From Heterodontus francisci (lineage: Eukaryota), in NCBI RefSeq assembly GCF_036365525.1, contig NC_090387.1, positions 92,545,691 to 92,609,690 on the forward strand: a stretch of DNA of 64,000 nucleotides. The letters run 5' to 3'. The position numbers and the translations under genes were made by a program. This document shows, in pieces, positions 3,438 to 24,620 of the stretch (positions are counted from its first letter, which is position 1; every line of letters starts with the position of its first letter). The notes beneath the pieces are model-generated. The model worked only from the letters and a program-made list of their open reading frames with translations, did not search any database and was not told the DNA's origin.

Positions 3438-3489
3438 GTCACCAGAGCTACTTGCTTATTGGCAGCAAGTTGTTATTACTTTGTTCAAT

Positions 3490-3544
3490 ATGACTGTGCG
3501 CGCTGTGTTTCGGTGCATGGTGATCTGGGGGATGAGCCCGACAG
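3490..3544 (+). CDS. Exon 1 (leader peptide) of a V-C1-TM-ITIM/ITSM Ig-superfamily receptor
   Basis: ATG at 3490 (A at -3) reads MTVRAVFRCMVIWGMSPT, then a phase-1 donor ACAG|GTATTT at 3545 that matches the phase-1 acceptor of the V exon. An in-frame upstream ATG at 3427 could extend it by 21 aa. Confidence 0.7.
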
Positions 3545-3683
3545 GTATTTTCCGCAATTGCATTTTTTTTTATCCTACTTTGTCTCTATTCCTCCGAAAC
3601 TAGATCTCTCTGACTGTCAGCCATTGCAAGTCTGATCTGATATGTTGGATGTATGATTGCATGTGTTTTTCTCTCCCTGAAAG

Positions 3684-4001
3684 TTTTTGGCAATGCCAAG
3701 TTCCAGGTTTCACAAAGCCCCCAACACAAGATTGTGACGATCGGTGAAAACATTACCTTCACTTGTGCGTTCACTCCTCTGTCAGATAATTCCGAAGTGA
3801 ATGTTTTCTGGTGGAAACTCGGCCAAAGTATATTCCTGCAACCTACCGCAGACAGGAGGAGACAATATTTTATCCGGAAAGGACAGGGCACACTCCAGCT
3901 CCTTGATATTCGTTTGCAGGACGCTGGGGTTTATTACTGCGGAGTCAAACAACAAAGAAACACGGTCACAAACGGAACTGGATCAAGTGTTGTTGTTCAC
4001 G
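3684..4001 (+). CDS. Exon 2: Ig V-set domain with germline-joined J-like G strand
   Basis: Acceptor ctctccctgaaag| and donor CACG|GTAAGC, phase 1-1. Motifs: VSQSP, TFTC (B-strand Cys), VFWWK (Trp), DAGVYYC (F-strand Cys), NGTGSSVVV (GxG J-like motif). Lies within ORF 3653-4033. Confidence 0.95.
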
Positions 4002-5780
4002 GTAAGCGGCCTTGTAGAGGATGGAGTTGTTAAAATTATGTCCAAGATAATTTAAATAACTGAAAATATTAGAAGATGCGGAGAGTGATTTGTGCCGTAT
4101 TTAACTATTTTAAAGCTTTTTGTCACCTGCCTATTAATCTTCAGTATTCACTATAAAAAGCTAAAGGGAGTGTTTTCAGCGCACAAAATGTCATCACAAA
4201 TAGGGAGCGCAATGTATTAATTTCAAAACTATTAATATTACTGAAACTACGTTATAGAGAATGTTAAATGGTTTGCAAATAATGTAATAACGTTCGACTT
4301 GACTTGTATGAATCCGATCTGATCGGCTCTACACATGTTTCCACCGGTATGATTCAGAAAATTGTCATATTTATAATAAAGATTGAACGTTTGATATTTC
4401 GAAAATTGTGGATAAAGCCAAAATGCAATTCTTGAACTGATGCAAGCATTAATGTTTAACACTTACAAGCGTTCATACATCAGAAGGCAATGTCCCAAAA
4501 GCCTGATACAATTTAACGATTCTCAGTCAGCAGTGAATCCCGGGAATGAACCATCGGAACCCCTAATCTCTCAACAAATAGTACTGAGAAATAGGTGTAT
4601 TGGAACTGATACGAACTAAGCATTTCTGCATAAATGCTGCATAAAGACTTTATTATAGTAAAAAAAATGTATTGAATTGCATTTATATAGCTCCTTGCAG
4701 ATACGCAGAGCTTCAGATAACATCGTTACACGCATACATCGGTTAAATCAAAGCAGATTCAAACAATTCGAATCGAACGTTGTTAAAGCTAGATGACAAT
4801 TATTCAGCGTTCTCTATAACTTGGCAAGAGTTTCTCCATAAAGAAATCCGAGCGAAGTGTATTCACTGTTGCTTTTACTTTCCTCACCAGAAGTATCTTC
4901 AAGATCCCTATTGATAATTATATTCCAAAATATTTCAATGACTATTACAGATTTAGGATTAAAACGTTAACGTAAATATTAATTACGGATAAAAGTATCC
5001 ACGTTTCTTCAATGTTGACCTTATAATGAACAAAGAGTTCATGGCATAAGCTTAAAATGGACTTAGTTGTTGACACATAGCACTGTTTGTAACGGAAAGT
5101 TAGTTGGGAGGAGATCATTTGCACAAAAGTGTTTCGTGAGTGAGCATTTAGTTCCTCCGATTTTACAGTGAATATATTCCTGTGCTAAACACATATGCAG
5201 CTCATGCTGTTGTTGTAGCGGAGCTCGTAGCACTTTTCTCTGAGTAATTGTGGGGAGAATTTATGGACTGTTCTTCATAAATTCACGTGTCCAAATATCT
5301 AATGGACTCTGTTGAAACGATATAAAAGGCCGTTTATCTGCTGTTTACGCTGACCTTCCCCGGAAAGTTCGAAGGTGATCAAGGAAACGCCCATGAAAAT
5401 TCCAGATATATTCCAGATTTAACCAATTGACCAGGCCTGCAAGTTTCCTTCGGTATTGGTAGATTACTGCCCTGTTGTACCTCTGTATTTCAGGTCAGAA
5501 TGCAACCAAGTCCTGTTTGTTTTTATTTGTCGAATTAAAATACCCCCAGCATTGTTGGGGAAAAAGCGAGCAGTTCTCACAGTATTTTGACCAACATTCC
5601 ACTGCCAATCTTTATTAATATATACAGATAAATTTGGAATTTGTTGAGATTTCCTATTTGAATCATGGTTGTTGCATTTACCCAAATCACAAAACTGATT
5701 TATCTGAAGATAATTCATTGTATAGAGATGTTATGATGTCTGTAATAGTTGTGAGGAAACGCTCTATAAATGCAGCTGTT

Positions 5781-8180
5781 TCATAGAATCATACAAAGTT
5801 TATGGCACAGAAAGCGGCCACTTGGCCCATCGTGTCTGCGATGGCCAAAAAACGAGTCACCCAGTCTAATCCCACCTTTCAGCATTTGATACGTAGTCCT
5901 GCAGATTATGGCACTTGAGGTGCATATCCAGACTCCTTGTAAATGAGTTCAGGGTCTCTGCCTCTACTATTCTTTCAGGCAGTGAGTTCCAGACCTCGCC
6001 ACCCTCTGGGTGATTTTTTTTCCTAATCTCCCCTCTGATTTTTCTACCAATGGTGTAAATCTGTATCCCCTAGTCACTGACCTCTCTGCTAAGGTAATAG
6101 GCCCCTAACATCCACTCTATCCAGGCCCCTCACAATTTTGTACATTTCAATCAGATCTCTCCTCAGCCTTCTCTGTTCCAAGGAGAACAACCCCAGCCTA
6201 TCCAATCTTTCCTCATAGCTGCATTTTTCCAGTCCTGGCAACATCCTCGTAAATCTCCTCTGTACCCTCTCTAGTGCAATTACATCCTTTCTGTAATGAG
6301 GTGACCAGAACTGCACACAGTACTCAAGTTGTGGCCTAACCAATGATTTATACAGTTCCAGCATAACTTCCCTGCTCTTATATCCTATACCTCGGCTAAT
6401 AAAGGAAAGGATTCCATATGCCTTGCTAACCACCTTATCGACCTGTCCTGCTACCTCGGGATCTATGGACATTCACTCCAAGGTTACTCACTTCCTCAAC
6501 ACCGCTCAGTATTCTTCCATTAATCGTATTTTCCTTTGCCTTGTTTGACCTCCCCAAACGCATCACCTCACACTTCTCCAGGTTGAATTCCATTTGCCAC
6601 TTTTTTGCCCATCTGATCAGTCCATCAATATCTTCCTGCAGTCTACAGCTATCCTCCTCGCTATCTACCACACGGCTAATCTTTGTGTTATCTGCAAACT
6701 TCTTGATCATGCCCCCTACATTTATGTCCAAATTGTTAATATATACCACTAAAAACAGGGAACCCAGTACTAAGCCCTGCAAAACACCATTGGAAACAGC
6801 CTTCCAGTTGCTAAAACACCTGCCAACAAGTATCTTTTGTTTCCTGCCCCTGAGCCAATTTTGTATCCACCTTGTTGCATTTCCTTGGATTCCATGGGCT
6901 TTTATTTTTCTAACCAGTCTGCCATGTGGGACCTTGTCAAAAGACTTGCTAAAATCCATGTAGACTAGAGGCCTGCTTTAGGTCGGGAAAAAGAACTCGA
7001 CCCGAACCCAACTGAACCGCAGCTAACCCGAGCCCGACCCAGCCCGTGTCCCTCTGATTTTGCCCTGAGCCCGACCAGACTCGAACCCGCCACTACTTGG
7101 CCCGACCCGACCATCCATTTACTTCCCTTCCTGACACCAAACCTGCAAGAAGCTGCAGCTCAAGCGTGATGACGTCATAGTGACGTCACTCGCTCATTGT
7201 GCAGACTCAGTTTCGTCCCATACTCCCAGCTCAGATAAGTTTTTCTTATTTTTAATACTTACCAGCAGAGGATGGACCGTGTTTGTCTGGCCTGACCTGA
7301 CCCAGCTGGATATGGACTCGACCCGACCCAACCCGCAGCCCGAAAGCCGGCCCTGGAAGATGGGCCCGACCTGAACCCGACACATGTCATCGGGTCGCAT
7401 CGGGTTTGGGTCGGGTAGCAGGCCTCTAATGTAGACTACATCACGTGCATTACTCTCATCTATCTTCCTTGTCACTTCTTCAAATAATTCAATCAAGTCA
7501 GTCAGACAAGATCTTCCCTTAACAAATCCATGCTGATTATCTTTGATTAACCTGTGCCTTTCTAAGTGACAGTTTTTCCTGTCTCTCAGAATTGATTCCA
7601 ATAATTTACCCACTACCAAAGTTAGACTGACAAGCCTGTAATTATTCAGTCTATCCCTTGCTCCCTTTTTTAAACAGAGGTACAATGATAGCAGTTCTCC
7701 AATCCTCTGGCACCACAGTGAGGACTGCAAAATGATGAACAGACCTTCTGCTATTTCCTCTCTGGCTTCTTTTAACAGCCTTGGGTACATTTCATCTGGC
7801 CCTGGTGATTTATCCACTTTCAAGGATGTTAATCCCATTAATACTTCATCTCTCCCCATGTTTATTACATACAATACTTTACACTTCTCCTTCTTAACTA
7901 CAATATCTGCATCGTCTCCCTCTTTTGTGAAGACAAAGTATTCATTAAGAACAATACAAACATCTTCCACCCCTACACATAGGTTACCTTTTGGTCATTT
8001 ATGGGCTCTATTCTCTCCTTAATTATCCTCTTACTCTTAATGTATTGATAAAACATCTTTGGGTTCATCTTGATTTTGCTTGCCAATATTTTCATGCCCT
8101 CTCTTAGCTTTCCTAATTTCCTTTTTGATTTCACTTTCTACTTTTGAGCCTCCTCTTGGCTTTCTGTAGTATTATGTTCA
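5781..8180 (-). mobile_element. CR1/HER1-type LINE, 5'-truncated, interrupted by a hAT MITE
   Basis: RT fragments MDFSKSFDKVPH, KFADNTKI, LEYCVQFWSPHY and VDKSPGPD in ORFs 6089-6959 and 7194-7970; (TTCTATGA)-type tail near 5781. Confidence 0.92.
6966..7428. mobile_element. Non-autonomous hAT DNA transposon (MITE)
   Basis: 12-bp TIRs TAGAGGCCTGCT/AGCAGGCCTCTA; perfect 8-bp TSD ATGTAGAC (6958-6965 and 7429-7436); dense subterminal CCCGA/TCGGG repeats. Confidence 0.92.
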
Positions 8181-8340
8181 TAATTCTGAGGCATTTATGA
8201 AAGTACAAGATTACTGTCATGTAATCAAAAAAAAATGTAAAGTTAATAAAGACTGAATTAACTTTTGGAAGTAAGATGTAATAATGCTCTAAATTTAAAA
8301 TACTGAACCTATATATGATTTTCCCTGAACACCTGTATAG

Positions 8341-8652
8341 TTCCGCCGTCTACCCCAAGGATTCTTACCAAAACGCCTGATGGAAATTCAAACATTTATC
8401 TTCATCTTGTATGTGAAACGACTGAGTTTTACCCGGAGACTATTACCTTCAGCTGGTACAAAAATACAAGTAACGTTGTAACCGGAATAAAAACCACAAA
8501 GCAATTGGACAATATGGGACTGTATCAAGCTTCCAGTATTCTTCAAGAGTCACAGCCAATTCAAATAGACACTTTTTATATTTGTTTGGTATCTCATAGC
8601 ACCCTCCCGACTCCAAAATTAGCTGTTTATTTGGTGTCTACTTCTAACCCAG
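8341..8652 (+). CDS. Exon 3: Ig C1-set domain
   Basis: Acceptor cctgtatag| and donor CCAG|GTAAGA; 312 nt open, phase 1-1. Reads VPPSTPRI..LVCETTEFYPETITFSWYKN..GLYQASSIL..YICLVSHSTL, with the C1 hallmarks FYP, W and YxCxVxH. Confidence 0.93.
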
Positions 8653-9154
8653 GTAAGAAGACAACGAATAGATCTTTATCCTCAATGTTATTGGGCTGCA
8701 AGTTGAGAAATAAGGCTGAGGCAAAGACTGCCCCTTGTTATTTATGTGGAAATCGGACACTCACGCATGTAAACTCGGAAGGCTGGAACTTTGGTGTCCG
8801 TGGTTCCCTGCTACCACAACCGCCATGGGATAACGGTATCTCACCGTTTGCCTCCTGGTGTGAAGTTACTGTACTTGCCTGGTGTGATACATGTTATAGA
8901 GTTAGGAGTATCTGTAGGTCAGTGTGGCTTGTTAAAGAGAGTAGCAGTGTAAATTTGATGGGAGTGGTATTCGGTGCAAAGGGAGAAGTAAGTGCTGAAT
9001 ATTCTAAACTATGGGGTAACAGAACACAGGCAAATAATCGCACTGGGGGCAATAGAATACATGATGCCTTGACCAACACACAAGAAAAAGCAGCAGGATC
9101 CGAGGACCTTAATATAATTAATTGATTAATTAATTGATATTTAAGAATCTAGAT

Positions 9155-9408
9155 TCTTCTTTCTTTTGGGCCTCCTTATCTCGAGAGACAATGGATACGC
9201 GCCTGGAGGTGGTCAGTGGTTTGTGAAGCAGCGCCTGGAGTGGCTATAAAGGCCAATTCTGGAGTGACAGGCTCTTCCACAGGTGCTGCAGAGAAATTTG
9301 TTTGTTGGGGCTGTTGCACAGTTGGCTCTCCCCTTGCGCCTCTGTCTTTTTTCCTGCCAACTACTAAGTCTCTTCGACTCGCCACAATTTAGCCCTGTCT
9401 TTATGGCT
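9155..9408 (-). mobile_element. RTE-clade LINE 3' fragment
   Basis: C-terminal zinc finger FLCSTCGRACHSRIGLYSHSRRC, GAA-rich tail and a 10-bp TSD GAATCTAGAT (9145-9154 and 9409-9418). Confidence 0.85.
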
Positions 9409-9429
9409 GAATCTAGATATGTTTTGTCA

Positions 9430-11455
9430 AAGAGGCATAACGGCACAGAAGGAGGCCATTTAGCCCCTTGATTCCATGCCGGCTGTCTGGAGAGCAATCA
9501 AATCATTCCCATTCCCCGGCTCTATCCCCGGAGCCCTGTAAGTTTATTTCCCTCAAATGCTCATTCAATTTCCTTTTGAAATCATTCACTGTCTCCGCTT
9601 CCACCACCCTCGAAGGCAGCGAGTTCCACGTCATTACCACTCGCTGTGTAAAAAAAAAGTTCTTCCTCACAAACCCCTGCATCCATTTCCCAAACCCTAG
9701 TCATAGAGTCATAGAGTTATACAGCACAGAAACAGGCCCTTCAGCCCTTTGGCCCATCATGTCTGTGCCGGCCATCAAGCACCTAACTATTCTAATCCCA
9801 TTTTCCAGCACTTGGCTCGTAGCCTTGTATGCTATGGTGTTTCGAGTGCTCATCTAAATACTTCTTAAATGTTGTGAGGGTTCCTGCCTCTACCACCCCT
9901 TCAGGTAATGTGTTCCAGATTCCAGCCACCCACTGGGTGAAAAAATCTTTCCTCAAATCCCCTCTAAACCTCCTGCCCCTTACCTTAAATCTATGCCACC
10001 TGTGCTAAGGGAAAACGTTTCTTCCTATCTACCCTACCTATGTCGCACATAATTTTGTATACCTCAATCATACCCCTCCTCAGCCTTCTCTGCTCTAAGG
10101 AAAACAACTCTAGCCTTTTCATTCTCTCTTCATAGCTGAAATATTCCAGCCCAGGCAACATCCTGGTGAATCTCCTCTACAACCACTCCAGTGAAATCAC
10201 ATTCTTCCTATAGTGTGGTGACCAGAATGGTACACAGTAGCATTGTGGCCTAACTAGCATTTTGTACAGCTCCATCATAACCTCCCTGCTCTTATATTCT
10301 ATGCCTTGGCTAATAAAGACAAGTATCCCATATGCCTTCCTAACCACCTTATCTACCTGTACTGCTGCCTTCAGTGATCTATGGACAAGTACACCAAGGT
10401 CCCTCTGACCCTCTGTACTTCCTAGGGTCCTACCGTCCATTGTATGTTCCTTTGCCTTGTTAATCCTCCCAAAATGCATCATCTCACACTTCTCAGGCTT
10501 AAATTCAATTTTCCACTGCTCTGCCCATCTTACCAGCCCATCTATATCATCCTGTAATCTAAGGCTTTCCTCCTCACTACTTACGGCACCACAATTTTTG
10601 TGTCCTCTGTGAACTTAATGATCATACCTCCTATATTCACGTCTAAATCTTTAATGTACACTACAAACAGCAAGGGTCCCAGCACCAATCCCTGCAGTAC
10701 ACCACTGGTCACAGGCCTCCACTCGCAAAAACAACCCTCGACCATTACCCTCTGCCTCCTGCCACTAAGCCAATTTTGGATCCAATTTGCCAAATTGCCC
10801 TGGATCCCATGGGCTCTTACCTTCTTAACCAATCTCCCATGCAGGACCTTATCAAAAGTCTTACTGAAGTCCATGTAGACTACATCAACTGCTTTACACA
10901 CTATCTACACACCAATCTCCTCCTCTAAAAATTCAATCAATAAGTTAGTTAGACACGATCTCCCCCTGACAAAGCCATGCTGGCTATCCCTGATTAATCC
11001 CTGCCTCTCCAAGTGGAGATTAATCCTGTCTCTCAGAATTTTTTCCAATAGTTTCCCTACCACTGATGTTAGACTCACTGGCCTGTAATGAACCTGGTTA
11101 ATCCCTACCCTTCTTAAATAATGGTACCACATTCACTGTCCTCCAGTCCTCTGGGACTTCTCCTGTGGCCAGAGAGGCTTTGCAAATTTGTGTCAGAGCC
11201 CTTGCAATCTCCGCCCTTGCCTCACATTGCAGCCTGGGATACATCTCATTTAGGCCTGGGGAATTATTCACTTTTAAGCCCACTAAAACCACTAATACCT
11301 CCTCCCTTTCAGTGCTAATTTGTTCAAGTATATCACAATCCCCCTCCCTGATCTCTACACCTACATCATCCTTCTCCATAGTGAACACCGATGAAAAGTA
11401 ATCATTTAAAACCTCACCTACATCCTCAGGCCCCAAACACAGATTGTCACTTTGT
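9430..11455 (-). mobile_element. Two CR1 LINE fragments in tandem (short 3' end about 9430-9690; longer copy about 9700-11455)
   Basis: ORF fragments 10177-11436 ([25 protein letters not shown]); two separate 3' ends. Confidence 0.88.
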
Positions 11456-11517
11456 CATAGAAAAAAAAACACCTTAGGTTCAGTAATGTTAGAGAATTTT
11501 TAGAGAAAAAATTCTGC

Positions 11518-11680
11518 AGGCCTTACCTGGTCTGGCTTACATATGAATCTTGACCCACAGCAATGTGATTGACTCTTAACTGCCCTCTGAAATGGCCCAG
11601 TAAGTGATTCAGTTGTCAAGGGCAATTAGGGATGGGCAACAGATGCTGGCCTTGCCAGCGACAGCCACATTACATGAAAA
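11518..11680 (+). mobile_element. DeuSINE (SacSINE1-like) 3' part
   Basis: CCTTACCTGGTCTGGC..CCCACAGCAATGTG..GACTCTTAACTGCCCTCTGAAATGG followed by the LINE-derived tail. A degraded minus-strand copy lies at about 14400-14670 and a 5' part at about 53370-53552. Confidence 0.65.
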
Positions 11681-11831
11681 CAAATGTGGTTATTAACGAT
11701 AGTGATTAATGTTAAGCTTGACTAATAAGGATTTAATATTCGTGAAAATAAGTATATGTCCTAGTGGTTAAATAATAGTGTTTAAAGATGCGAATAACTT
11801 AACAATAGATACGTCAGAGTTAATAATTAGT

Positions 11832-11933
11832 AACAAAAATAAGAAATGCTGGAAATACTCAGCAGGTCTGGCGGCATCTGTGGAGAGAGAAACAGAGTTA
11901 ACGTTTCAGGTCAGTGACCCTTCAGCAGAACTT
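11832..11933 (-). mobile_element. Hammerhead element copy 2 (intron 3)
   Basis: 13-bp TSD GTTAATAATTAGT (11819-11831 and 11934-11946). Core reads CTGCTGA (A6 mutated)..GGTCACTGACC-TGAAACGTTAACTC. Confidence 0.85.
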
Positions 11934-14220: not shown

Positions 14221-14689
14221 AGTTTTAGTTTAGGCAGGCATCAAGATCGGCGCAGGCTTGGAGGGCCGAATGGCCTGTTCCTTTGCTGTACTGTTCTTTG
14301 CTCTTTGATATATCAGACACTAGTTGATATATATGAAAGTTCCTAAGAAGGTGGTGGCCTAGCAGAAAACTAGTTGATATCTAATGCTGTTTCCATTTTT
14401 AAAATATTTCATGGAAAGCCAGCATTTGTTGCCCACCCCTAATTATCCTTGAACTGAGAGGCTTTCTAGGCCATAAGAGTCAACCACAATACTGTGAAGA
14501 TTTCCTTCGCTAACGGACATTCGTGAATCAGATGGCTTTTTATGACAATAGCTTTTTTTTAATTAATGACATTTCAATCGCATGGTGGGCTGTGAACCCG
14601 CGTCCCGAATGACTATTTACACCTCTGAATTATAAGGGCTGCGACGTTACCATTACACCACCACGGCCCATAACACCACGAAAGGGAAA

Positions 14690-15270: not shown

Positions 15271-15742
15271 ATGAAGCAGACGCATCACCTAAACTTCATA
15301 AGATGACATCCTATTGGCGTAAAAGATTGAAATTGCGAACTGCCTGCTGTATGTCTGGCTGAGATGGGGACAAGGAATTCAATGACAGGGCTTGCTTGTG
15401 CCAGGCGAAATGCTTTGAGTGGAGATATCCAGCAGCACGGCTTAAACCGCACAAAAGCCAACGAACACACATCCAATTCAGAGAAACTGGCCCTGGTGTA
15501 TTGTGTCCAAAATTCCGAAAGGCAAGCTCAACCAATAAAAAAATGTCCATGTTATGCTTTTAGACTCCATCCAGTTTCTATGCGCCGGAGTGAAATTGCC
15601 ATCATTAAGATAGAGTTTAAATGCATGAGTAAAGTTAATTAAGTTTTGTTTCAGTCGTTACCTGTTAAGTCATTTTGAAGTTATTGTTGTTTCGTAACTC
15701 CTGTAGGGCAAATTCTCCTAGCTACATTCATTAATCTTACAG

Positions 15743-15856
15743 ACATCAATATTAAATTTGAATACTTACTGACTGTTGGGTGTGTGGTCAGCGGATTCTT
15801 ATGTCTAGTGCTGGGGACCATAATTGGAAAAGGATGTCAGTTACGGACCCGTGGAG
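15743..15856 (+). CDS. Exon 4: transmembrane exon
   Basis: Acceptor ttaatcttacag| and donor GGAG|GTAAGG; 114 nt, phase 1-1. Reads DINIKFEYLLTVGCVVSGFLCLVLGTIIGKGCQLRTRG: an uncharged hydrophobic helix followed by basic stop-transfer residues. Confidence 0.88.
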
Positions 15857-16299
15857 GTAAGGAATTGTTCATGATTTATATCTAACAGCCTCAATTAAAC
15901 ATAATATTCATCACCAGAAGGCCGATAAACGCGGAGTTACTGTCAGTGCATGAATTTCAAGCTTTCGTGGGACTGGCAATTAAGTGTGATTATTTGAATA
16001 CAGAAATCTTTTTTTTTACCTGTTAAGCCAAGATAGATCTTCGAGTGGTATACACAACTAAAATGAATGCATATTTAAAATGTAATTTGAATTCTATCGC
16101 GCTATTTTACGGTAACTATCAGTACAGGTACAATTTAGGGTCTGGATTTTTTTAGCTTGCAGTAGTTCAAATGCACGACAGTAATTATGATATCGAACTA
16201 TTCAGCGCCAGTCGACCGTCTGGATACATATGCACTTGCTCTGTCTAAAAAAATTGAAATTCACAGCTAAGTTTTTCCTTTCTCTTTTACGATGTACAG

Positions 16300-16337
16300 A
16301 TACAAAACAAAATGGATCTCATCATTGTGAAGACACG
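16300..16337 (+). CDS. Exon 5: short cytoplasmic exon
   Basis: Polypyrimidine tract tttttcctttctctttt..acag| and donor ACG|GTATGT; 38 nt, phase 1-0, DTKQNGSHHCEDT. Supplies the phase change needed to join exon 4 to exon 6. Confidence 0.8.
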
Positions 16338-16605
16338 GTATGTTCATATATTCCAGCCATTATGTTATTGTGTGTATATGTTCATTCTGACGTAGCATGA
16401 GATTTATGTGTAAAATAAGTCTACTTTAGTCTCAGCATGTTCTTCAAATGCCGGATGTGTTCCAACTGAAAATCAAATGAACGCTGGTCTGCTTATGTGT
16501 ATGAAGTCACAGATTGAGTACCCCACATACGCACTTCACAATGGTTCCATAGCTTTCATTTCAAACACTTTGGCCTATCTATGTAAAATTGCAAGCCTTT
16601 ACTAT

Positions 16606-16884
16606 CACCAGGGGGCATAATTTTAAGGTGATTGGAGGAAGGTTTCGGGGAGATGTCAGAGATGGTTCTTTGCACAGAGAGTGGTGGGTGTGTGGAATGC
16701 GCTGCCAGCGGTGGTAGTAGAAGCAGATACATTAGGGACATTTAAGCAACTCTTGGATAGGTACATGGATGATAGTAGAATGAAGGGTAGGTAGGTAGTT
16801 TGATCTTAGAGTAGGTTAAAGGTTCGGCACAACATCGTGGGCCGAAGGGCCTGTACTGTGCTGTACTGTTCGATGTTCTATATT
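16606..16884 (+). mobile_element. Short CR1 3' end insertion
   Basis: 9-bp TSD CTTTACTAT (16597-16605 and 16885-16893); sequence nearly identical to 38969-39250. Confidence 0.88.
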
Positions 16885-18062
16885 CTTTACTATTCGTGTT
16901 AAATTGTTTTTCTGACTGCGCTTATGTGCATCTTTCAGGAAGCTGATTTCATGGCCCAGATTTTGCAGTCAGTGGTGAAGGAATAGCATTCACAGTTCAT
17001 TAAGCCACAGACGTTTTGGTGGGCTGTTGCGGGGCAATTTATAGTAATTGGAAATTCCATTCAGTGTGCACCTTCTACTGGGGGTCATTGTCATGTGTGA
17101 ACATGGCAAGTAACCCACGTTGAAACTATCAGACTGATGAATCCGTACACCCGCCCGCAGAGCACAAACCAGAACTGTCAGTAAAAAATATTTAATTCAA
17201 ATTAAAATCGTGTGCATCAAGCAAAATCAAGAAAAAGAATAAAGATTAGATAAAGAGGGATAAATAAAACAGACAAAAAGAAAGACTAAAAACATATGCT
17301 TTCAAAGTTTCAAAAGTGATCTCCATTTTGCTGTCAGCGGTGAAGGAACAGCGCTCGCTGCTTACCTCACAGATAACTGTCTATAGATATGTTCCAAAGT
17401 TTTCCACCAACCTGGCTTGTCTTCTACCGTATAGCCCTATACTACCGTATAGTCCGTGAACAGGTCATGCTACAGCCAGGCTCCTCAGCCAATCAAATTA
17501 AAGTATCCTCACTGAGCCCGGCAGAGTCCAAACCAGTAAGGATAAAGCAGGCCATATAAATTAGATTTAAATGTTGTAGAGCAAGTGAAATAAAGATTGT
17601 GAAATACTGATGGGTTTAAGGAGGGCAGCTTACAGAGACAAACAGAAAAAAAGTAAAGAAAAATAAAGATCTTAACTGTAACATTATTGTTTTCCTGAGG
17701 GAATGAGATTCCACGTTAATGAACTTTTTGCTCAGCCCCAGAGATGTTGTTCAGCAGTAATTATCACATATTGCGCCACCAAATGGCCAATCAATCCAGA
17801 GGAGCAGTCAGTTGTGCCAGTCTGTTATTGAAATATGTATTCAAAGGATAGCAGACAATTCTGAGAAGGATGTGCTAAATCACGTGGATCACATCCTAAG
17901 TATTTTGACGAAACCTAGAAATGTGGTTGAAATTTAAGCATTGAAGGTAGCGCATAGAAGAACATAGAAAAAGTGTTAGGGATCCGAATTTGTGGTGGTG
18001 GGGGGTGGGGGGGGGGGGGCGTTAGCCTTAAAATGAGCTCTCGAAGGAAAAGATTATACAGA

Positions 18063-18206
18063 ATAAAAGCAAAATACCGCAGATGCTGGAAATCTGAAAC
18101 ACAAGCAAGAAATGCTGGAAATACTCAGCAGATCTGGCAGCATCTGTGGAGAGAGAAACAGAGTTAACGTTTCGGGTCAGTGGCCCTTCATCAGAAATTT
18201 CTGATG
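18063..18206 (-). mobile_element. Hammerhead element copy 3 (intron 5) with terminal fold-back
   Basis: 14-bp TSD AAAGATTATACAGA (18049-18062 and 18207-18220); intact CTGATGA..GAAACGTT on the minus strand; ends in the hairpin TTCATCAGAAATTTCTGATGAA. Confidence 0.85.
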
Positions 18207-18742
18207 AAAGATTATACAGAGATGTTTGTTTCGGAAAAGTGTGAACACGGTCATTCCGGGAAATGACTTGAAATCAAATTAAATTAAACTGAGAGAGAAG
18301 GAAAGGGGGCGGACAGACGCAAAGCTTCAAAATTAAATGACAGATGTCAGAGCAATTTTCTTCACAAAAGAACTATCAGAGATCTAGATGGAGTGATTGG
18401 AAATAAAAATCTGCAAATGTTTATGAAACAGCTGGATGCTGCAGTAACCTGAGGGATGTTCTGTACTGATCCAATAAGAAAAGCAAAATTACACGCCGGC
18501 ACCTGTGATCAGTAACTTTGAATATGATATACATCGGCCAATAGTTTGGAGTTCTCTGTGTAATTATGGTCATGTAAATCCAATATGGACATTCGTGTTG
18601 GGGTCTGTATAGAGTAGAACATTAGTATCAATGTTACATATCTATGGCGAGAGATACTAAGCCAGCTCCAGGTGTTTGGGATAGTAAAAGGAAGATTCCA
18701 GAACTTCAATCATCTAAGAAGGCCAACTAAACGGGTTAAAGA

Positions 18743-19047
18743 TACAGTGGCACAGTGGTTAGCACCGCAACCTCACAGCTCCAGTGACCCGGGTTCAATT
18801 CTGGGTATCGCTTGCGTGGAGTTTGTAAGTTCTCCCTGTGACCGTGTGGATTTCCGCCGGTTTCCTCCCACAGCCAAAGACTTGCAGGGTGATAGGTAAA
18901 CAGGCCATTATAAATTTCCCCTAGTATAGGTGGGGATGTGATAGGAATGTATGTGGGATCAGTATAAATGAGTGGTTGATGGTCGGCACAGACTCGGTGG
19001 GCTGAAGGGCCTGTTTCAGTGCTGCATCTTTAAATAAATAAAATAAA
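18743..19047 (+). mobile_element. HE1-like tRNA-derived V-SINE
   Basis: A box TGGCACAGTGG, B box GGTTCAATTC, V-domain GTGGAGTTTG..TTTCCTCCCACA, CR1-derived 3' end and (TAAA)n tail. Confidence 0.88.
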
Positions 19048-21142
19048 CATTGTTGGAGTAACGATATGATGGCAGATGAGAAAGGAGCCATTCTCTCAAA
19101 ATACATGGTGCCTCGTCTCATATACTGCTTTGATCTCGGGGGCAGATTGTTGGACTGAAAATCAATGCTTTGTAATGGACATTCGCAACATTTCTCAAAT
19201 TCCGGCGATCTTTCGAAGAAGCTTTGAAAGATAGCGAGGAACCTTCGGAGAATCCCATGGTCAGTGTTGTTCCGGGTTCTCTGCTTCTGCCTTTCCCTAT
19301 CTACAAGCGTGATATGTGGGAAAAATGCGATAGAGTGTCTGGTGACGGGAAACGCCAGCCTCGATAGTCTTATGGAATTAAAGCAAGATCTGTATTGTTG
19401 TAAAGTGCGAGTTCGATGTAGCGAAATGCCTCACCATTTGTCAGAAAATTGAGGTCATGTAACGGGGTGGTTCTGCTGTCCGGTGCAAAACCACTTAAAA
19501 TCAATCCGCAAGAAGACGCCGCAAGTCACAGGTGTTAATGTGGAGCGAACTGTGTGTCAGCGAACTGCAGATGGCACATCGGTCGGAGTTGGAGCGAATC
19601 AGTGGGACTGGAGATGTTACTTGATGGTGGAAGCTCGAGGCGTAAAACTGGGAGAGGACAAAGAAACTCAAGAGGCAGAGAGATGGAAAGCCTTGAGAGA
19701 CAGTGAATGAGGGAAGAAAAGAGGGATCATAGATTCTCAGACAGTCCGATTCTCTAGTTTAATAGAGAGAGCAGAGCAGAAACGGAGAATCTACTGCCTC
19801 TCTGCATAATTAGATCTTCTATAATTCTGCGTTGCCATATAAAATCGATTGTCTAAAATTCTCTACAAAATATCAGATAATTTTGAATTGCAAGATAAAT
19901 TAAAAGGGTTTGAACACTAATGAAGAGTTAAGATTTAACAATTATTTATGCGGGATTACTCGGGTCCCAGCGAAAATATCAGTTTACCATAAAGGAGATT
20001 ATTGTATTCTTAAAGTAAAATTATTGTATGGGAGAATACCGCCAGATGGTAGCTGGATCCACTTAATAACCCGAAGGTAAGTCGGAAATCGTTACAATGA
20101 CAATGAAGGAATAGGTCAGTGTCAGAATACATATATCTCGAAATAGAGAGATTGATACATGGATATTGGTAGTCTTTCTGGTGCTGGGAATATCTATGTT
20201 TATACTTCAGGCAAATCATATTTGAGTTACGCAACCGGATAATAACATCTGCCGTTCTATTTGAGTGCTCGTTAAATGTGAAAAAGGGGGCCTATTAGGT
20301 CCCGAATGTTGCATATTGTGTAGGGTCGCGTCAAAAGATTAAATGGATTCAGTGCAACTTTCAATATCCGTATCACATTGATATCCACAGTTATAATTAG
20401 TGAGATAGCATATAGCTGCAAAACGCTTTAGAACCAAAGAACCATAGAAGAAAATAAAGCACAGGAGGCCATTCAGCCCCTCGTGTCCGTGCCGGCTGAA
20501 AAACTAATTCCACCTTCCAGCACCTGGTCCGTAGCCTGGCAGGTTACAGCAATTCAGGTGCATGTCCAGGTACCTTTTTTTAAAAATGGAGGGTTTCTGC
20601 CTCCTCCACCATTCCTGGCAGTGAATTCCAAACACCCACCACCCTCTGGGAGAAAAAAGATTTTCCTCATGTCCCCTCTAATCCTTCTACCAATCACCTT
20701 AAATCTGTGCCCCCTGGTAATTGACCACTCCAATAGGGGAAACAGGTCCTTCCTGTCTACTCTAACTAGACCCCTCATAATTTTGTACACCTCAATTAAG
20801 ACCCCCCCCCCCCCACTCCGCCCCCCAGCCTCCTCTGTTCTAAGGAAAACAACCCTGGCTGATCCAATCTTTCCTCACCGCTGCAACTTTCAAGCCCTGG
20901 CAATATTCTTGTAAATCTCCTCTGCACTCTCTCCAGAGCAACTATGTCTTTCCTGTAATGTGGTGACCAGAACTGTATGCAGAACTGTGGCTGAACCAGC
21001 GTTTTGTACAGTTCCAGCATTACATCCCTGCTTTTGTATTCTATACCTCGGCCAATAAAGGAAAGCATTCCTTATGCCTTCTTCACCACTTTATCTACCT
21101 GTCCTGCCACCTTCAGGGACATGTGGATATACACTCCAAGGT

Positions 21143-21502
21143 TTAGTTTAGTTTAGTTTAGAGATACAGCACTGAAACAGGCCCTTCGGCCCACCGAGTC
21201 TGTGCCGAACATCAACCACCCATTTAGACTAATCCTACACTAATCCCATATTCCTATCACATCCCCACCTGTCCCTATATATTTCCCTCCCACCTACCTA
21301 TACTAGGGGCAATTTATAATGGCCAATTTACCTATCAACCTGCAAGTCTTTGGCATGTGGGAGGAAACCAGAGTACCCGGAGGAAACCCACGCAGACACA
21401 GGGAGAACTTGCAAACTCCACACAGGCAGTACCCAGAATCGAACCCGGGTCCCTGGAGCTGTGAGGCTGCGGTGCTAACCACTGCGCCACTGTGCCGCCC
21501 CA
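21143..21502 (-). mobile_element. Full-length HE1-like V-SINE inside CR1
   Basis: Minus strand starts GGGGCGGCACAGTGGCGCAGTGG with B box GGTTCGATTC and a (CTAAA)n tail; short TSD AAGGT. Confidence 0.9.
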
Positions 21503-23736
21503 GAAGGTCTCTCACTTCTTCTACTCCTCTCAATATCCTCCCGTTTATTGTGTATTCCATCACTTTATTTGCCTTTCCCAAGTGCATTACCTCACACTTC
21601 TCCGGCTTGAATTCCATTTGCCACTTTTCCGCCCACTCAACCAAACCATTGATATCTTTCTGGAGTCTGCAGCTATCCTCCTCACTATCAACTACACGGC
21701 CAATTTTTGTGTCATCAGCAAATTCCCCAATCATGCCTCCTACATTTAAGTCCAAGTCATTAATATATACCACAAACAGCAAGGGACCCAACACTGAGCC
21801 CTGTGGAATGCCACTGGAAACAGCTTTCCATTCACAAAATCATCCATCGACTACTACCCTTTGTTTCCTGTCACTGAGCCAATTCTGGATCCAACTTTCC
21901 ACATTCCCCTGTATCCCATGGGCTTTCATTTTACTGACCAGTCTGCCATGCAGGACCTTGTCAAATGCCTTACTAAAGTCCATGTAGACCACATCCACTG
22001 CACTACCCTCATCAATCCTCCTTGTCACTTCCTCAAAGAATTCAATTAAGTTAGTAAGACATGACCTTTCCTTAACAAATCCATGCTGACTATCCCTGAT
22101 TAATCCATACCTTTACAAGTGGCAGTTTATCCTGTCCCTCAGAATTGATTCTAATAATTTACCCACCACTGAGGTCAGACTGACTGGCCTATAATTATTT
22201 AGCCTACCCCTCGCACCCTTTTTAAACAATGGTATAACATTCACAGACTTCCAATCCTCTGGCACCTCGCCCATATCCAGTGAGGATTTGAAGATGATCC
22301 TCAGCGCATCTGCTATTTCCTCACTGGTTTCCTTTAACAACCTTGGATGCAATCCATCCAGCCCTGGTGATTTATCCACTTTCAAGGATGTCAGACACTC
22401 TAGTACTTCCTCTCTCATGCTAATCATATCTAATATTTCACAGTCCTCCTCTTTTACTATAATATCTGCTTCATCCCTCTCTTTTGTAAAGACAGAGGCA
22501 AAAAACACGTTAAGAACCCTACCCATATCATTGGCATCCATGTGTAAGTTCCCTTGTACATCTCTGAGAGGCCCTACTCTTTCCTTAGTTATCCTCTTGC
22601 TCTTAATGTACTGATAAAACATCTTTGGGTTTTCCTTGATTTTACCTGCCAATATTTTTTCGTGTCCTCTCTTTGCTTTTTTAATTTCCTTTTTTACTTC
22701 ACCCCTGCACTTTCTATACTCCTCTAGGCTTTCTGAAGTATTAAGTTTTTTGTGATCATCACAAGCTTTATTTTTCTGCTTTAACTTACCCTGAAAGCCT
22801 CTTGATAACCATGGGGCTCTAGATTTGTCTGTACCACCCTTTATCTTTGTGGACATGTGTCTGCACTGTGCCTGTAGAATCTCGCTTTTGAATGCCTCCC
22901 ACTGGTTTGCCACTGATGTTCCTTCCAGTAGCTGTATCCAGTCCACTTTTGCCAGGTTACGTCTCAGTTTTGTAAAATTTGCCTTCTCCCAATTTAGAAC
23001 TTTAACTCCTGTTTCATCTTTGTCCTTTTCCATGATTATGCTAAAACTAATTGTATTATGCTATCTATCTCCAGAATGGTCACCCATTGCTACTTCATCT
23101 ACTTGCCCAGCTTCATTACTGAAGACTAAATCTAGAATTATGCCCCCTCTCATTGGACTTGTTACGTGCTGGCTAAAAAAGTTCTCTTGAGTGCAGTTCA
23201 AGCATTTTGTCCCCTCTGTGCCCTTCACACTGTTTGTTTCCCAGTTGATATTCAGGTAGTTGAAATCTCTGACTATTATTGCCCTATAATTTTTACACTC
23301 AGAAATTTGCCTACATATATGTTCCTCTATCTCCCTCCCACTATTTGGGGGTCTGTAGTACACTCCTAGTAGTGTGGCTGCCCCTCTATTTCTGATTTCC
23401 ACCCATATGGCCTCTTTTGACAATTCATTTAGCATATCATCCCTCCTCACAGCTGTTATTGATTCCTTAACCAATAATGCTACTCCCCCCTTTTTATCCC
23501 CCTCTCTACCCGCCTGAAAAACTCGATATCCACAGATGTTGAGCTGCCATTCTTACCCCACTTTAAGCCAAGTTTCCATTCTAGCAACAATATCATGTTG
23601 CCATGTGTCTATCTGTGCCCTCAGCTCACCGGCTTTGTTCATTATACTCCTTGCATTTAAATAAATACCTTTTAACACTGCCAAATTCCTGTGCTGCACA
23701 CTTTTTAATCTTTGCTTCTTCTGTCTTTCCGAGTCG

Positions 23737-24075
23737 TAGAGAGATACAGCACCGAAACAGGCCCTTCGGCCCAACGAGTCCGTGCCGACCATCAACCACC
23801 CATTTATACTAATCCTACATCAATCCCATTTTTTCCCTCTCACATCCCCACCTTCCCTCAATTCTCCTACCACCTACCTACACTAGGGGCAATATTTTTA
23901 CAATGGCCAATTTACCTATCAACCCGCAAGTCTTTGGCATGTGGGAGGAGACCAGAGCACTTGGAGGAAACCCACGCGGTCACAGGGAAAACTTGCAAAC
24001 TCTGCACAGGTAGTACCCAGAACCAAACCGGGTCACAGGAGCTGTGGTGCTAGCCAATGCGCCACTGTGCCGCCC
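23737..24075 (-). mobile_element. HE1-like V-SINE
   Basis: Same head, V domain and tail as 21143-21502. Confidence 0.88.
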
Positions 24076-24446
24076 TTAATGATCAGGATTGCTAGCCCAT
24101 GTTGATTACTTCCCCCTCCCTAGCCCTGGCCAATTTTTTGCCTTCCGTTCCCTGCCCTGAAATTGTCCTATCTGAAACTGCCCTCAGGTTCCCATCCCCC
24201 TGCCAAGCTAATTTAAACCATCCCCAAAAGCACTGGCAAACCTTCCTGTAGGATATTTGTCCCAGTCCTGTTCAGGTGCAGACCGTCCGGTTTGTGCAGG
24301 TCCCACCTTCCCCAGAATCAGTCCCAATGCCCCAGAAATCTGAAGCCCTCCCTCCTGCACCACCTTTGAAACCAAATCTGGTTTATATAGCAATCTGAAA
24401 ACTGATGAGGAACATGTTTTAACCATATAGCTCTTTACTGTTACAG

Positions 24447-24620
24447 TCCATGGAACGAAGAGATGATAACACATTGGATTACGCTGCCCTAAATGTGAAT
24501 GGTTTAGAGAAAAGAGGAATCCGCAAGGAGAATAAAAAGTGTACGGAATATGCTGCAATCAAACTAGACCGGTACGAAAGAGATGCACAATATGCCTACA
24601 GAGAACCAGTAGTCAAATGA
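24447..24620 (+). CDS. Exon 6: terminal cytoplasmic exon with ITIM and ITSM
   Basis: Acceptor ctctttactgttacag|, phase 0. Reads SMERRDDNTLDYAALNVNGLEKRGIRKENKKCTEYAAIKLDRYERDAQYAYREPVVK*; ITIM LDYAAL at 24474-24491, ITSM TEYAAI at 24543-24560. Confidence 0.88.
   Translation, partial: SMERRDDNTLDYAALNVNGLEKRGIRKENKKCTEYAAIKLDRYERDAQYAYREPVVK

What the first reader, a model, noticed from the sequence alone, without database searches (positions are those of the whole stretch)
3490..24620. Hidden six-exon, non-rearranging antigen-receptor-like (VJ-C1) inhibitory receptor with a PD-1/SIRP-type ITIM+ITSM tail
Seen: six exons with canonical GT-AG sites and compatible phases (1,1,1,1,0) join into a stop-free 1011-nt CDS (336 aa) spread over 21 kb of TE-filled introns; the ORF track shows only the V exon and part of C1. 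Architecture: leader, V with J-like NGTGS, C1 (FYP, WYKN, YICLVSH), uncharged TM, then LDYAAL..TEYAAI. Known: C1-set domains are largely confined to Ig/TCR/MHC/tapasin/SIRP-type molecules, and single-exon VJ domains occur in NKp30/NCR3, SIRP and CD8-like genes. A germline VJ-C1 receptor is the form proposed for antigen-receptor precursors. Inference: this is a shark checkpoint-like receptor, with one C1 (SIRPalpha has two, PD-1 has none), possibly an uncharacterised family. Orthology cannot be assigned from sequence alone.
Basis: partly seen in the sequence, partly recalled or inferred. Interest (0 to 1): 0.9.

Follow-up and report, generated by a model that had tools for sequence, protein, structure and literature searches.

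The report
Shark SIRP-like V-C1 inhibitory receptor gene
This is a real, spliced horn-shark gene for a surface receptor with one antibody-like variable domain, one constant domain and a tail with two conserved inhibitory tyrosine motifs. Public annotation already predicts it under misleading automatic names, and it belongs to a large, apparently unstudied shark, ray and chimaera family that most resembles SIRP receptors.

Summary
Six GT-AG exons (3490-3544, 3684-4001, 8341-8652, 15743-15856, 16300-16337, 24447-24620) have phases 1,1,1,1,0 and add up to 1011 nt.

- **Domains:** Pfam calls the V exon V-set and the next exon C1-set.
- **Already annotated:** the gene is not hidden. Exons 1-5 and the first 42 codons of exon 6 match RefSeq XP_067906095.1 of Heterodontus francisci exactly ("tapasin-related protein-like isoform X2"). 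One is an alternative exon-4 acceptor at 15707, which adds 12 residues. The other is an internal donor after 24571 leading to a seventh exon at 27122.
- **Expression:** contigs from four runs (two samples, two studies) carry the V-to-C1 splice.
- **Conservation:** the gene has one orthologue per shark species. Both tyrosine motifs and their 23-residue spacing are invariant in seven genera.
- **Family:** it is a large multigene family with ITIM/ITSM members and short-tail members carrying arginine in the membrane span. All 30 or so named members are from sharks, rays or chimaeras.
- **Nearest known proteins:** Ig light chains, SIRP alpha/gamma and UrIg2. SIRP membership is unproven, because this gene has one C1 domain, not two, and synteny could not be checked.

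The scan has already noted genes of this family elsewhere in this genome. Most likely it is a SIRP-like inhibitory receptor that recruits SHP phosphatases.

The parts
3490..3544 (+). Exon 1: start codon and most of the signal peptide (18 codons plus 1 nt, phase 1). The last leader residues are on the V exon, a split leader.
   Evidence: Identical to residues 1-18 of P0151. The first 52 nt of the X1 contig fall in bin 3400-3599 by depth arithmetic.
3684..4001 (+). Exon 2: V-set Ig domain with a built-in J-like G strand (phase 1-1).
   Evidence: Pfam V-set 3.6e-9, Ig_3 5.7e-10. Identical to P0151 residues 20-124. AF2 pLDDT above 90. RNA contigs cover it.
3971..3997 (+). J-like motif NGTGSSVVV, the counterpart of FGxGTxLxV. 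Both glycines are invariant or nearly so in the family. N-G-T is also an N-glycosylation sequon.
   Evidence: Alignment A1 has G116 invariant and G118 at 90% or more.
8341..8652 (+). Exon 3: C1-set Ig domain (phase 1-1).
   Evidence: Pfam C1-set 4.1e-11. PDB hits to Ig CL/CH1, IgM, UrIg2 and IgNAR C1. Spliced to exon 2 in four runs.
15707..15742 (+). Optional 36-nt 5' extension of exon 4 through an alternative acceptor. It adds 12 stalk residues that include an NLT sequon (RefSeq isoform X1).
   Evidence: P0175 sequence and window sequence. Contigs in X1 and X4 continue with G after 8652, as this acceptor predicts. The X2 contig does not.
15743..15856 (+). Exon 4: short stalk, uncharged transmembrane helix and the basic stop-transfer residues.
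   Evidence: AF2 helix 231-264.
16300..16337 (+). Exon 5: 38-nt juxtamembrane exon (phase 1 to 0) that puts the tail exon in frame.
   Evidence: Best 38-nt candidate by splice signals. Identical to P0151 residues 268-279. Orthologues have a 12- or 13-residue segment at the same place.
24447..24620 (+). Exon 6: cytoplasmic tail. RefSeq isoforms leave at an internal donor after 24571.
   Evidence: The read-through ending resembles the Heptranchias and Pristiophorus C-termini.
24474..24491 (+). ITIM, LDYAAL.
   Evidence: The xYAAL core is invariant in 7 shark genera.
24543..24560 (+). ITSM, TEYAAI, with its tyrosine 23 residues after the ITIM tyrosine.
   Evidence: T[EHQ]YAA[IV] and the spacing are invariant in 7 shark genera.
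27122..27149 (+). Alternative exon 7, which gives the C-terminal 8 residues plus TAA of both RefSeq isoforms.
   Evidence: I have no RNA evidence of my own for it.

Best explanation
The window carries a functional, expressed, non-rearranging gene of the horn shark Heterodontus francisci. It encodes a type I membrane receptor with a signal peptide, one V-set domain whose G strand carries a germline J-like motif, one C1-set domain, a short stalk of two alternative lengths, an uncharged transmembrane helix, and a tail of about 70 residues holding an ITIM and an ITSM 23 residues apart.

The most likely mechanism is inferred, not shown. After the V domain binds an unknown ligand, Src-family kinases phosphorylate the two tyrosines. 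The tandem SH2 domains of SHP-1 or SHP-2 dock on the pair and dampen nearby activating signals, as happens for SIRP alpha and PD-1.

The gene is the conserved, one-per-species member of a large chondrichthyan family. That family also has short-tail members with arginine in the membrane span, which are probably activating partners that use an ITAM adaptor. The family therefore behaves like a SIRP-type paired-receptor system.
For: **Gene and splicing**
- RefSeq proteins P0151 and P0175 match the exons exactly.
- The exon 2 to exon 3 splice appears in contigs of four runs from two studies. There is no depth in unique intron sequence, which shows these runs hold RNA.
- Four of the six variants seen in the runs are synonymous.

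**Domains**
- Pfam calls V-set and C1-set.
- The AF2 model has both domains above pLDDT 90 and a TM helix.

**Conservation**
- The orthologue clade has one sequence per shark species, with SH-aLRT support 96 and 99.
- The tail is only 42-54% identical between genera, yet both motifs and their spacing are invariant in seven genera.

**Family**
- Long-tail ITIM/ITSM members and short-tail members with Arg in the TM both occur.
- All named members are chondrichthyan.

**SIRP likeness**
- The family profile aligns in one stretch over SIRP alpha D1-D2 (64.7 bits).
- Its C1 part scores best on SIRP alpha D3 (48.1 bits).
- SIRP alpha, SIRP gamma and UrIg2 are the only hits among the top 60 not named as an antibody or Fab chain, apart from one entry called CT3, whose alignment reads like an antibody chain.
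- The nearest named language-model clusters are SIRP alpha.
- The SIRP alpha / SIRP beta mechanism is taken from PMC12975943.
Against: - No phosphorylation, SHP binding, ligand or cell type has been shown. The function rests on two six-residue motifs and their conservation.
- Only one of the splice junctions was seen directly in RNA. The exon 1-2 junction is supported only by depth arithmetic.
- Junctions 3-4, 4-5 and 5-6, which put the tail in frame, rest on the RefSeq model and on orthologue conservation.
- Ig light chains score slightly higher than SIRP alpha on the V-C1 unit (72.4 and 70.4 against 64.7 bits). Foldseek ranks light chains first.
- The window's V domain alone shows no special likeness to SIRP D1.
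Confidence: 0.7

Rival explanations
1. It is a true member (co-orthologue) of the SIRP family. On this view the chondrichthyan family and the SIRP alpha/beta/gamma genes of bony vertebrates descend from one ancestral gene, and this copy keeps only one C1 domain and one ITIM pair.
For: - The profile aligns contiguously over SIRP alpha D1-D2, and SIRP alpha D3 is the best single C1 match.
- SIRP gamma is also in the top 60.
- The nearest named language-model clusters are SIRP alpha.
- NCBI's commonest automatic name for family members is SIRP alpha-like.
- The family is organised as paired inhibitory and Arg-TM members, like SIRP alpha and SIRP beta (PMC12975943).
- From memory only, the human SIRP alpha tail also pairs an xxYADL motif with a TEYASI motif about 24 residues later.
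Against: - There is one C1 domain, not two.
- The skate member with two C1 domains has near-identical copies, which points to a recent duplication.
- Ig light chains score as high or higher.
- No bony-vertebrate protein came up as a close relative.
- ITIM plus TEYAxI pairs also occur in PD-1 and in Siglecs (from memory), so the tail is not diagnostic.
Confidence: 0.3
2. It is a relic of the antigen-receptor precursor lineage (UrIg or PRARP type). It would work as one chain of a dimer that pairs through its V and C1 domains like an Ig light chain or a TCR chain, with the inhibitory tail a secondary feature.
For: - The V exon is germline-joined with a J-like GxG motif, has a split leader, and is followed by a C1 domain.
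- The best V-C1 profile scores are to lambda and kappa light chains. UrIg2 is the second whole-chain hit.
- Foldseek ranks light chains first.
- Flajnik and colleagues regard such VJ-C1 genes as candidate precursors (PMC12227049; PMC10751288).
Against: - The stalk has no cysteine for an interchain bond, and the TM has no charged residue for adaptor pairing.
- The position of the J-segment Phe/Trp is a conserved Asn within an N-G-T glycosylation sequon. A glycan there would hinder a VL/VH-type interface; this is inference.
- AF2 gives an extended V-C1 arrangement that aligns better with B7 and nectin-type ectodomains than with Fab or TCR chains. Inter-domain geometry is weakly predicted, though.
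- The homodimer prediction gave no verdict.
Confidence: 0.12
3. It is a B7-type ligand (B7-H6 or B7-H3-like) shown to another cell's receptor. The tail tyrosines would then serve reverse signalling or trafficking.
For: - NCBI names some orthologues 'NCR3 ligand 1-like' or 'CD276 homolog'.
- The two-domain structure search puts B7-H6, B7-H3, PD-L2 and butyrophilin among the best matches, at Z 14.6-16.0.
Against: - Those Z values are tied with many unrelated two-Ig proteins such as Rst, Neph1 and NCAM2.
- No B7-family protein is in the top 60 sequence-profile hits.
- The only B7-like database hits are very weak, at E 3e-8 and 3.5e-10.
- The conserved ITIM-ITSM pair and the Arg-TM paralogues are hallmarks of receptors, not of B7 ligands.
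Confidence: 0.05
4. It is a decaying or non-functional copy, and its apparent structure is an annotation artefact.
For: - The introns are large and full of LINE fragments.
Against: - All exons are open with canonical splice sites.
- The transcripts are spliced.
- One-to-one orthologues have conserved motifs across sharks.
- The variants seen are mostly synonymous.
Confidence: 0.02

Closest known systems
SIRP family (SIRP alpha / PTPNS1, SIRP beta, SIRP gamma)
   Same: - A non-rearranging N-terminal V domain with a J-like G strand is followed by C1-set domain(s), a single TM and a tail with tyrosine motifs for SHP-1/SHP-2.
- The family has inhibitory members and short-tail members with a basic TM residue.
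- The profile aligns contiguously over SIRP alpha D1-D2, and D3 is the best single C1 match.
- It is the nearest named language-model cluster.
   Different: - One C1 domain instead of two.
- One ITIM/ITSM pair instead of four tyrosines.
- V domain without DSSP-called C' or C'' strands in the model.
- No close bony-vertebrate relative found.
- CD47 binding and synteny are untested.
Immunoglobulin light chains (lambda, kappa) and TCR chains
   Same: V followed by one C1 domain. These give the highest V-C1 profile scores (72.4 and 70.4 bits) and the top Foldseek hits. The J-like GxG motif is present.
   Different: - V and J are already joined in one germline exon with no RSS.
- It has a TM and an inhibitory tail.
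- There is no interchain cysteine.
- An Asn-glycan sequon sits at the J Phe/Trp position.
UrIg / UrIg2 (non-rearranging shark antigen-receptor-like genes; PMC12227049)
   Same: It is a cartilaginous-fish, germline-joined VJ exon with a split leader, followed by C1-type domains and a TM. UrIg2 (9dmx) is the second-best PDB profile hit, and the window's C1 exon hits it at E 3.4e-10.
   Different: - UrIg2 has a VJ domain plus 9 to 11 C domains and forms disulfide-linked dimers. This gene has one C1 domain and an ITIM/ITSM tail.
- The V-C1 score to UrIg2 (55.5 bits) is lower than to IgL or SIRP alpha.
PD-1 (PDCD1) and other ITIM+ITSM receptors
   Same: The tail logic is the same: an ITIM is followed about 23-25 residues later by a TxYxx[IV] switch motif. 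The PD-1 spacing is from memory.
   Different: PD-1 has a single V domain and no C1 domain. No sequence relationship of the ectodomain was seen.
PRARP genes (Fu et al. 2019, J Immunol, cited in PMC10751288)
   Same: [quoted passage not shown]
   Different: No comparison was possible. The paper is not held and no PRARP sequence was available. From memory, chicken PRARPs have a V domain only.

Membership tests
SIRP family | [quoted passage not shown] | tested here: met
   Pfam V-set 3.6e-9. J-like NGTGSxxxV with conserved glycines. The profile aligns over SIRP alpha D1.
SIRP family | [quoted passage not shown] | tested here: not met
   There is one C1 exon only. No second C1-like exon is found anywhere in the 64-kb window. 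RefSeq isoforms also have one.
SIRP family | Cytoplasmic tyrosine motifs (ITIMs) that recruit SHP-1/SHP-2 | tested here: inconclusive
   The motifs LDYAAL and TEYAAI are present and conserved in 7 genera. Binding cannot be tested with these tools.
SIRP family | Paired activating relatives with a basic TM residue (SIRP beta / DAP12 type) | tested here: met
   Short-tail family members have Arg in or at the TM, for example P0010, P0011, P0013 and P0181. Adaptor binding is untested.
SIRP family | Closer in sequence to SIRP than to other V-C1 families; orthology by tree and synteny | tested here: inconclusive
   SIRP alpha D1-D2 scores 64.7 bits, against 72.4 and 70.4 for Ig light chains and 55.5 for UrIg2. 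No SIRP sequences were available for a tree.
SIRP family | Binds CD47 | not testable with these tools
   No ligand data.
Rearranging antigen receptors (Ig/TCR) | Separate V and J (and D) segments flanked by recombination signal sequences | tested here: not met
   V and the J-like motif are contiguous in exon 2. There is no CACAGTG/CACTGTG heptamer in 3400-4400.
Rearranging antigen receptors (Ig/TCR) | V domain followed by a C1-set domain | tested here: met
UrIg / UrIg2 | VJ exon followed by several C1-type domains (UrIg2 has 9-11) that form an Fc-like dimer | tested here: not met
   There is a single C1 domain. The UrIg2 architecture is taken from PMC12227049. The homodimer prediction gave no verdict.
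CD28 / PD-1 family | Single V domain ectodomain without a C domain | tested here: not met
   A C1-set exon is present and is spliced to V in RNA.
B7 family (B7-H6, B7-H3) | IgV-IgC ectodomain with specific sequence or structure likeness to B7 proteins | tested here: inconclusive
   B7-H6 scores Z 16.0 but ties with unrelated two-Ig proteins. No B7-family protein is in the top 60 sequence-profile hits. Database hits to CD276-like proteins are weak.
PRARP | Sequence and orthology relationship to the published PRARP genes | not tested

The most novel reading that the evidence does not exclude
The conserved one-per-species shark gene and its family may be an early-branching, non-rearranging VJ-C1 lineage that sits between SIRP and the Ig light-chain / UrIg group. 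It would then be a surviving example of the minimal V-C1-TM form proposed for the antigen-receptor precursor, already wired to inhibitory signalling and paired with activating twins. That would make the ancestral signalling mode of pre-RAG receptors testable in living animals.
Probability: 0.12. Interest if true: 0.8.

Novelty: new variant of a known kind. Interest (0 to 1): 0.45.

Why it matters
Non-rearranging V(J)-C1 genes are the candidates for what antibodies and T-cell receptors looked like before the RAG transposon split a V exon. In cartilaginous fish, only UrIg and UrIg2 appear as characterised examples in the papers I could reach.

This gene shows that sharks keep a whole family of minimal V-C1 receptors with SIRP-like inhibitory and putative activating forms. 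One member has been conserved one-to-one across shark orders, with an invariant ITIM-ITSM pair.

Public annotation gives the orthologues at least seven different automatic names: tapasin-related, Ig lambda-like, SIRP alpha-like, SIRP beta-like, CD276, NCR3 ligand-like and uncharacterized. The family is therefore easy to overlook or to misuse in comparative work. A proper phylogeny, a synteny map and a ligand search would clarify the origin of SIRP-type paired receptors and their relation to antigen receptors.

Tried and rejected
- **Fragment search:** searching the C1 exon alone for short homologues found nothing, because the length filter excludes full-length proteins.
- **Family profile search:** the last homologue search, with the family profile, returned only chondrichthyan members and two weak B7-H3-like hits. 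It gave no SIRP or Ig sequences for a tree.
- **Genomic context:** I therefore have no chromosome coordinates, no cluster map and no synteny.
- **Structure search:** VIA-align gave tied Z values of 14-16.6 to many two-Ig proteins, and Foldseek gave only antibody light chains. Neither decides family membership.
- **Homodimer prediction:** the ectodomain run scored 0.22 against a mark of 0.32. The tool's verdict is no answer, so it counts neither for nor against binding.
- **Literature:** I found no paper that names this family. The PRARP, UrIg (2023), B7H6 (2012) and Dornburg and Yoder papers are not held.
- **Other copies and RNAs:** no second family gene is in the window. The other tblastn hits are LINE pieces that are wrongly included in the N-termini of database models P0010 and P0156. 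Rfam found nothing in the window.
- **Skipping exon 5:** splicing exon 4 directly to exon 6 would shift the frame and stop after a few codons, so exon 5 is needed (my own reading).
- **Joined model:** it was never built or searched. Whole-protein analyses used database proteins P0151 and P0175 instead.

Full report

Yes. I read every proposed boundary in the sequence and checked the boundaries by script.

| Exon | Coordinates | Length | Content |
|---|---|---|---|
| 1 | 3490-3544 | 55 nt | ATG, 18 codons plus one base |
| 2 | 3684-4001 | 318 nt | V domain |
| 3 | 8341-8652 | 312 nt | C1 domain |
| 4 | 15743-15856 | 114 nt | stalk and TM |
| 5 | 16300-16337 | 38 nt | juxtamembrane |
| 6 | 24447-24620 | 174 nt | tail, TGA at 24618-24620 |

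All five introns are GT..AG with good polypyrimidine tracts. The four split codons read GTT, GTT, GAC and GAT, so the phases are 1,1,1,1,0. The lengths sum to 1011 nt.

Each exon was translated in its own frame and compared with database proteins.

The only strongly hydrophobic 21-residue stretch between exons 3 and 6 is the proposed transmembrane segment, and it has no charged residue. Pfam calls exon 2 V-set (E 3.6e-9; Ig_3 5.7e-10) and exon 3 C1-set (E 4.1e-11). The mechanical ORF list shows only the V exon and part of C1. The introns hold LINE reverse-transcriptase and endonuclease fragments on the minus strand.

Exon 5 was the weak point, since a 38-nt exon could be found by chance. Fifteen open 38-nt AG..GT candidates exist between exons 4 and 6. 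Among those fifteen, 16300-16337 has the best joint splice-signal score. It lies only 443 nt downstream of exon 4 in non-repeat DNA.

**2. The gene is already predicted in public annotation.**

A HMMER search of the V exon against 1.84 billion representatives, followed by a homologue search, returned P0151. This is RefSeq XP_067906095.1, "tapasin-related protein-like isoform X2" of Heterodontus francisci. It is identical to the window's exons 1-5 and to the first 42 codons of exon 6. The window is therefore horn-shark DNA from a 99.65-Mb chromosome.

Its cluster mate P0175 (XP_067906093.1, isoform X1, 341 aa) uses an alternative exon-4 acceptor at 15707. That adds 12 stalk residues, including an NLT sequon.

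Both RefSeq isoforms leave exon 6 at an internal donor (CG|GT after 24571). They finish in a seventh exon at 27122-27149.

It does resemble the C-termini of the Heptranchias and Pristiophorus orthologues, which end in ...PVVK and ...AYRE, so it may be the older form. All versions keep both tyrosine motifs.

**3. RNA evidence.**

Seven public runs hold the V exon. I laid four of them, from two samples and two studies, on 3400-9399. They are stored as contigs.

- **Splice seen:** every run has a contig that joins 4000/4001 to 8340/8341 (GT..AG, skipping 4339 nt).
- **These runs hold RNA:** depth is confined to the exons, with none in unique intron sequence (4400-5599, 8800-8999). The run records only guess at RNA, so this settles that the runs contain spliced transcripts.
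- **Exon 1 to 2:** the X1 contig has 52 nt in front of the V exon. The depth in bin 3400-3599 (1.38 = 5.3 x 52/200) places those bases in exon 1, which is consistent with the 3544-to-3684 junction.
- **Both exon-4 acceptors:** after exon 3, the X2 contig stops matching at 8652, as expected if exon 4 starts at 15743 with A. The X1 and X4 contigs match one base further, a G, as expected for the 15707 acceptor. Both acceptors seem to be used.
- **Unspliced RNA:** X4 also holds a minor contig running from 3972 into the intron at 4348.
- **Not seen:** junctions 3-4, 4-5, 5-6 and 6-7 lay outside the 6,000 letters allowed in the single call. I did not see them directly.
- **Variants:** of the six variants in the runs, four are synonymous.

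**4. Orthologues and family.**

The homologue searches give one close relative in each of the following:

- Mustelus
- Scyliorhinus (two species)
- Rhincodon
- Stegostoma
- Chiloscyllium
- Hemiscyllium
- Heptranchias
- Pristiophorus

In a maximum-likelihood tree of 70 ectodomains (65 of them distinct), these form one clade that follows shark phylogeny. SH-aLRT support is 96 for the galeomorph set. A branch with support 99 separates the clade from the other 58 sequences.

Identity to the horn-shark protein varies by region:

| Region | Identity |
|---|---|
| V | 60-64% |
| C1 | 64-70% |
| Exon 5 | 23-41% |
| Tail | 42-54% |

Within that variable tail, the core xYAAL, the motif T[EHQ]YAA[IV] and the 23-residue spacing between the two tyrosines are invariant in all seven genera aligned. 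This is the strongest argument that the tail is read in frame and that the motifs are functional.

Beyond the orthologue clade there is a large family.

- **Long-tail members:** tails carry one to three ITIM/ITSM units.
- **Short-tail members:** these have arginine at or inside the membrane span, for example P0010, P0011, P0013 and P0181.
- **Odd members:** a skate member has two near-identical C1 domains.

All of the 30 or so members whose source I could look up are from sharks, rays, skates or the chimaera Callorhinchus. In each species the members share one chromosome or scaffold.

NCBI's automatic names for them are inconsistent: SIRP alpha-like, SIRP beta-like, tapasin-related, Ig lambda-like, NCR3 ligand 1-like, CD276 and uncharacterized.

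The window itself holds only this one family gene.

**5. What is it most like?**

A profile of 47 family members was searched against all PDB sequences. The per-stretch scores were:

| PDB target | Part matched | Bits |
|---|---|---|
| Lambda light chain | V-C1 unit | 72.4 |
| Kappa-type light chain | V-C1 unit | 70.4 |
| SIRP alpha D1-D2 | V-C1 unit, one contiguous alignment | 64.7 |
| UrIg2 | V-C1 unit | 55.5 |
| Fab heavy chain | V-CH1 | about 48 |
| SIRP alpha D3 | single C1 domain (best of any) | 48.1 |

Among the top 60 hits, SIRP alpha, SIRP gamma and UrIg2 are the only ones not named as an antibody or Fab chain, apart from one entry called CT3, whose alignment reads like an antibody chain.

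The window's C1 exon alone hits Ig CL/CH1, IgM, UrIg2 (E 3.4e-10) and IgNAR C1. Its V exon alone has no specific nearest family. A protein-language-model search puts SIRP alpha clusters directly after the family's own clusters and ahead of kappa light chains.

The AlphaFold2 model is confident for both Ig domains and for the TM helix. Structure searches do not discriminate, however. VIA-align gives tied Z values of 14-16.6 for Rst, B7-H6, Neph1, PD-L2, B7-H3 and butyrophilin. Foldseek lists only antibody light chains.

So the protein is a V(J)-C1 chain about equally distant from Ig light chains and SIRP. Its membrane anchor, tail and paired-receptor family organisation match SIRP as described in PMC12975943.

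It fails one defining SIRP feature, the two C1 domains. I therefore call it SIRP-like and do not file it as a SIRP.

**6. How it probably works.**

*Shown:*
- An expressed, conserved type I membrane protein with V, C1 and an uncharged TM.
- A tail with an ITIM and an ITSM at a spacing that is conserved.

*Inferred from established knowledge of ITIM/ITSM receptors (SIRP alpha; PD-1 from memory):*
- Ligand engagement by the V domain leads to phosphorylation of the two tyrosines by Src-family kinases.
- The tandem SH2 domains of SHP-1/SHP-2 bind both phosphotyrosines and dephosphorylate nearby activating complexes.
- The Arg-TM relatives probably signal through an ITAM adaptor and may share ligands, giving a paired system.

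The J-like motif reads N-G-T-G-S. The asparagine takes the place of the J-segment Phe/Trp and is part of a glycosylation sequon conserved across the family. I infer that a glycan there would argue against a VL/VH-type dimer. A homodimer prediction gave no verdict.

**7. Novelty and literature.**

I found no paper that names or studies this family.

The closest literature covers three things. UrIg and UrIg2 have a VJ exon plus many C domains (PMC12227049). VJ-C1 genes in general are discussed as possible precursor relics (PMC10751288). PRARP (Fu et al. 2019) I could not read.

Earlier notes of this scan describe the same kind of gene elsewhere in this genome. Two are on the same chromosome piece. 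Follow-up agents reached the same "SIRP-like, annotated but unnamed family" reading. I treated those notes as leads, and my own searches agree with them.

The finding is a sound gene model of an uncharacterised but already predicted gene. It is a new variant (V plus one C1, one ITIM-ITSM pair) of a known kind of receptor. It is not a hidden or categorically new entity.

**8. Verdict.**

- Observation: confirmed.
- Interpretation: partly supported.
- Best explanation: a SIRP-like inhibitory paired-receptor member, confidence about 0.7.
- Interest: moderate, 0.45. It is useful to comparative immunologists working on the origin of SIRP and antigen receptors. However, it is already in RefSeq, it has been seen repeatedly in this scan, and it has no functional data.

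Noticed in passing
window 9000-9399: RNA contig depth is extremely high here, up to about 6.7e5 summed word depth in one run. The stretch is a repeat inside intron 3, with a minus-strand ORF (9213-9497) that has a Cys/His-rich tail. It is probably a very abundantly transcribed SINE or LINE 3' end. Rfam finds no known RNA family there.
   Followed up: partly
window 30617-31187 and 31557-31970: Two G+C-rich minisatellites lie downstream of the gene: 27 bp x 21 copies at 92% match, and 40 bp x 10.4 copies at 95% match. They explain the GC peak at 30-32 kb.
   Followed up: no
window 3972-4348: Run X4 holds a contig, at depth 21 against about 190 for the spliced form, that runs from the end of the V exon into intron 2. 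This is unspliced pre-mRNA or intron retention.
   Followed up: no
database proteins P0010 (H. francisci) and P0156 (Pristiophorus): The predicted N-termini contain LINE reverse-transcriptase-derived residues that match many repeat copies in this window. These public gene models are probably mis-extended at the 5' end.
   Followed up: partly
database protein P0110 (Amblyraja radiata): This skate family member has V plus two near-identical C1 domains. That points to a recent exon duplication giving a SIRP-like three-domain layout independently.
   Followed up: no
database protein P0122 (Scyliorhinus canicula): This model repeats its stalk, TM and tail block twice almost verbatim. The cause is either a tandem duplication or two neighbouring genes merged in the prediction.
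   Followed up: no
window 8381, 8409, 8570, 8619: Run X3 (coded organism B, another study) differs from the window at four C1-exon positions. Two are synonymous; the other two are V to I and L to V. This indicates another individual or a close relative with a conservatively varying C1 domain.
   Followed up: partly
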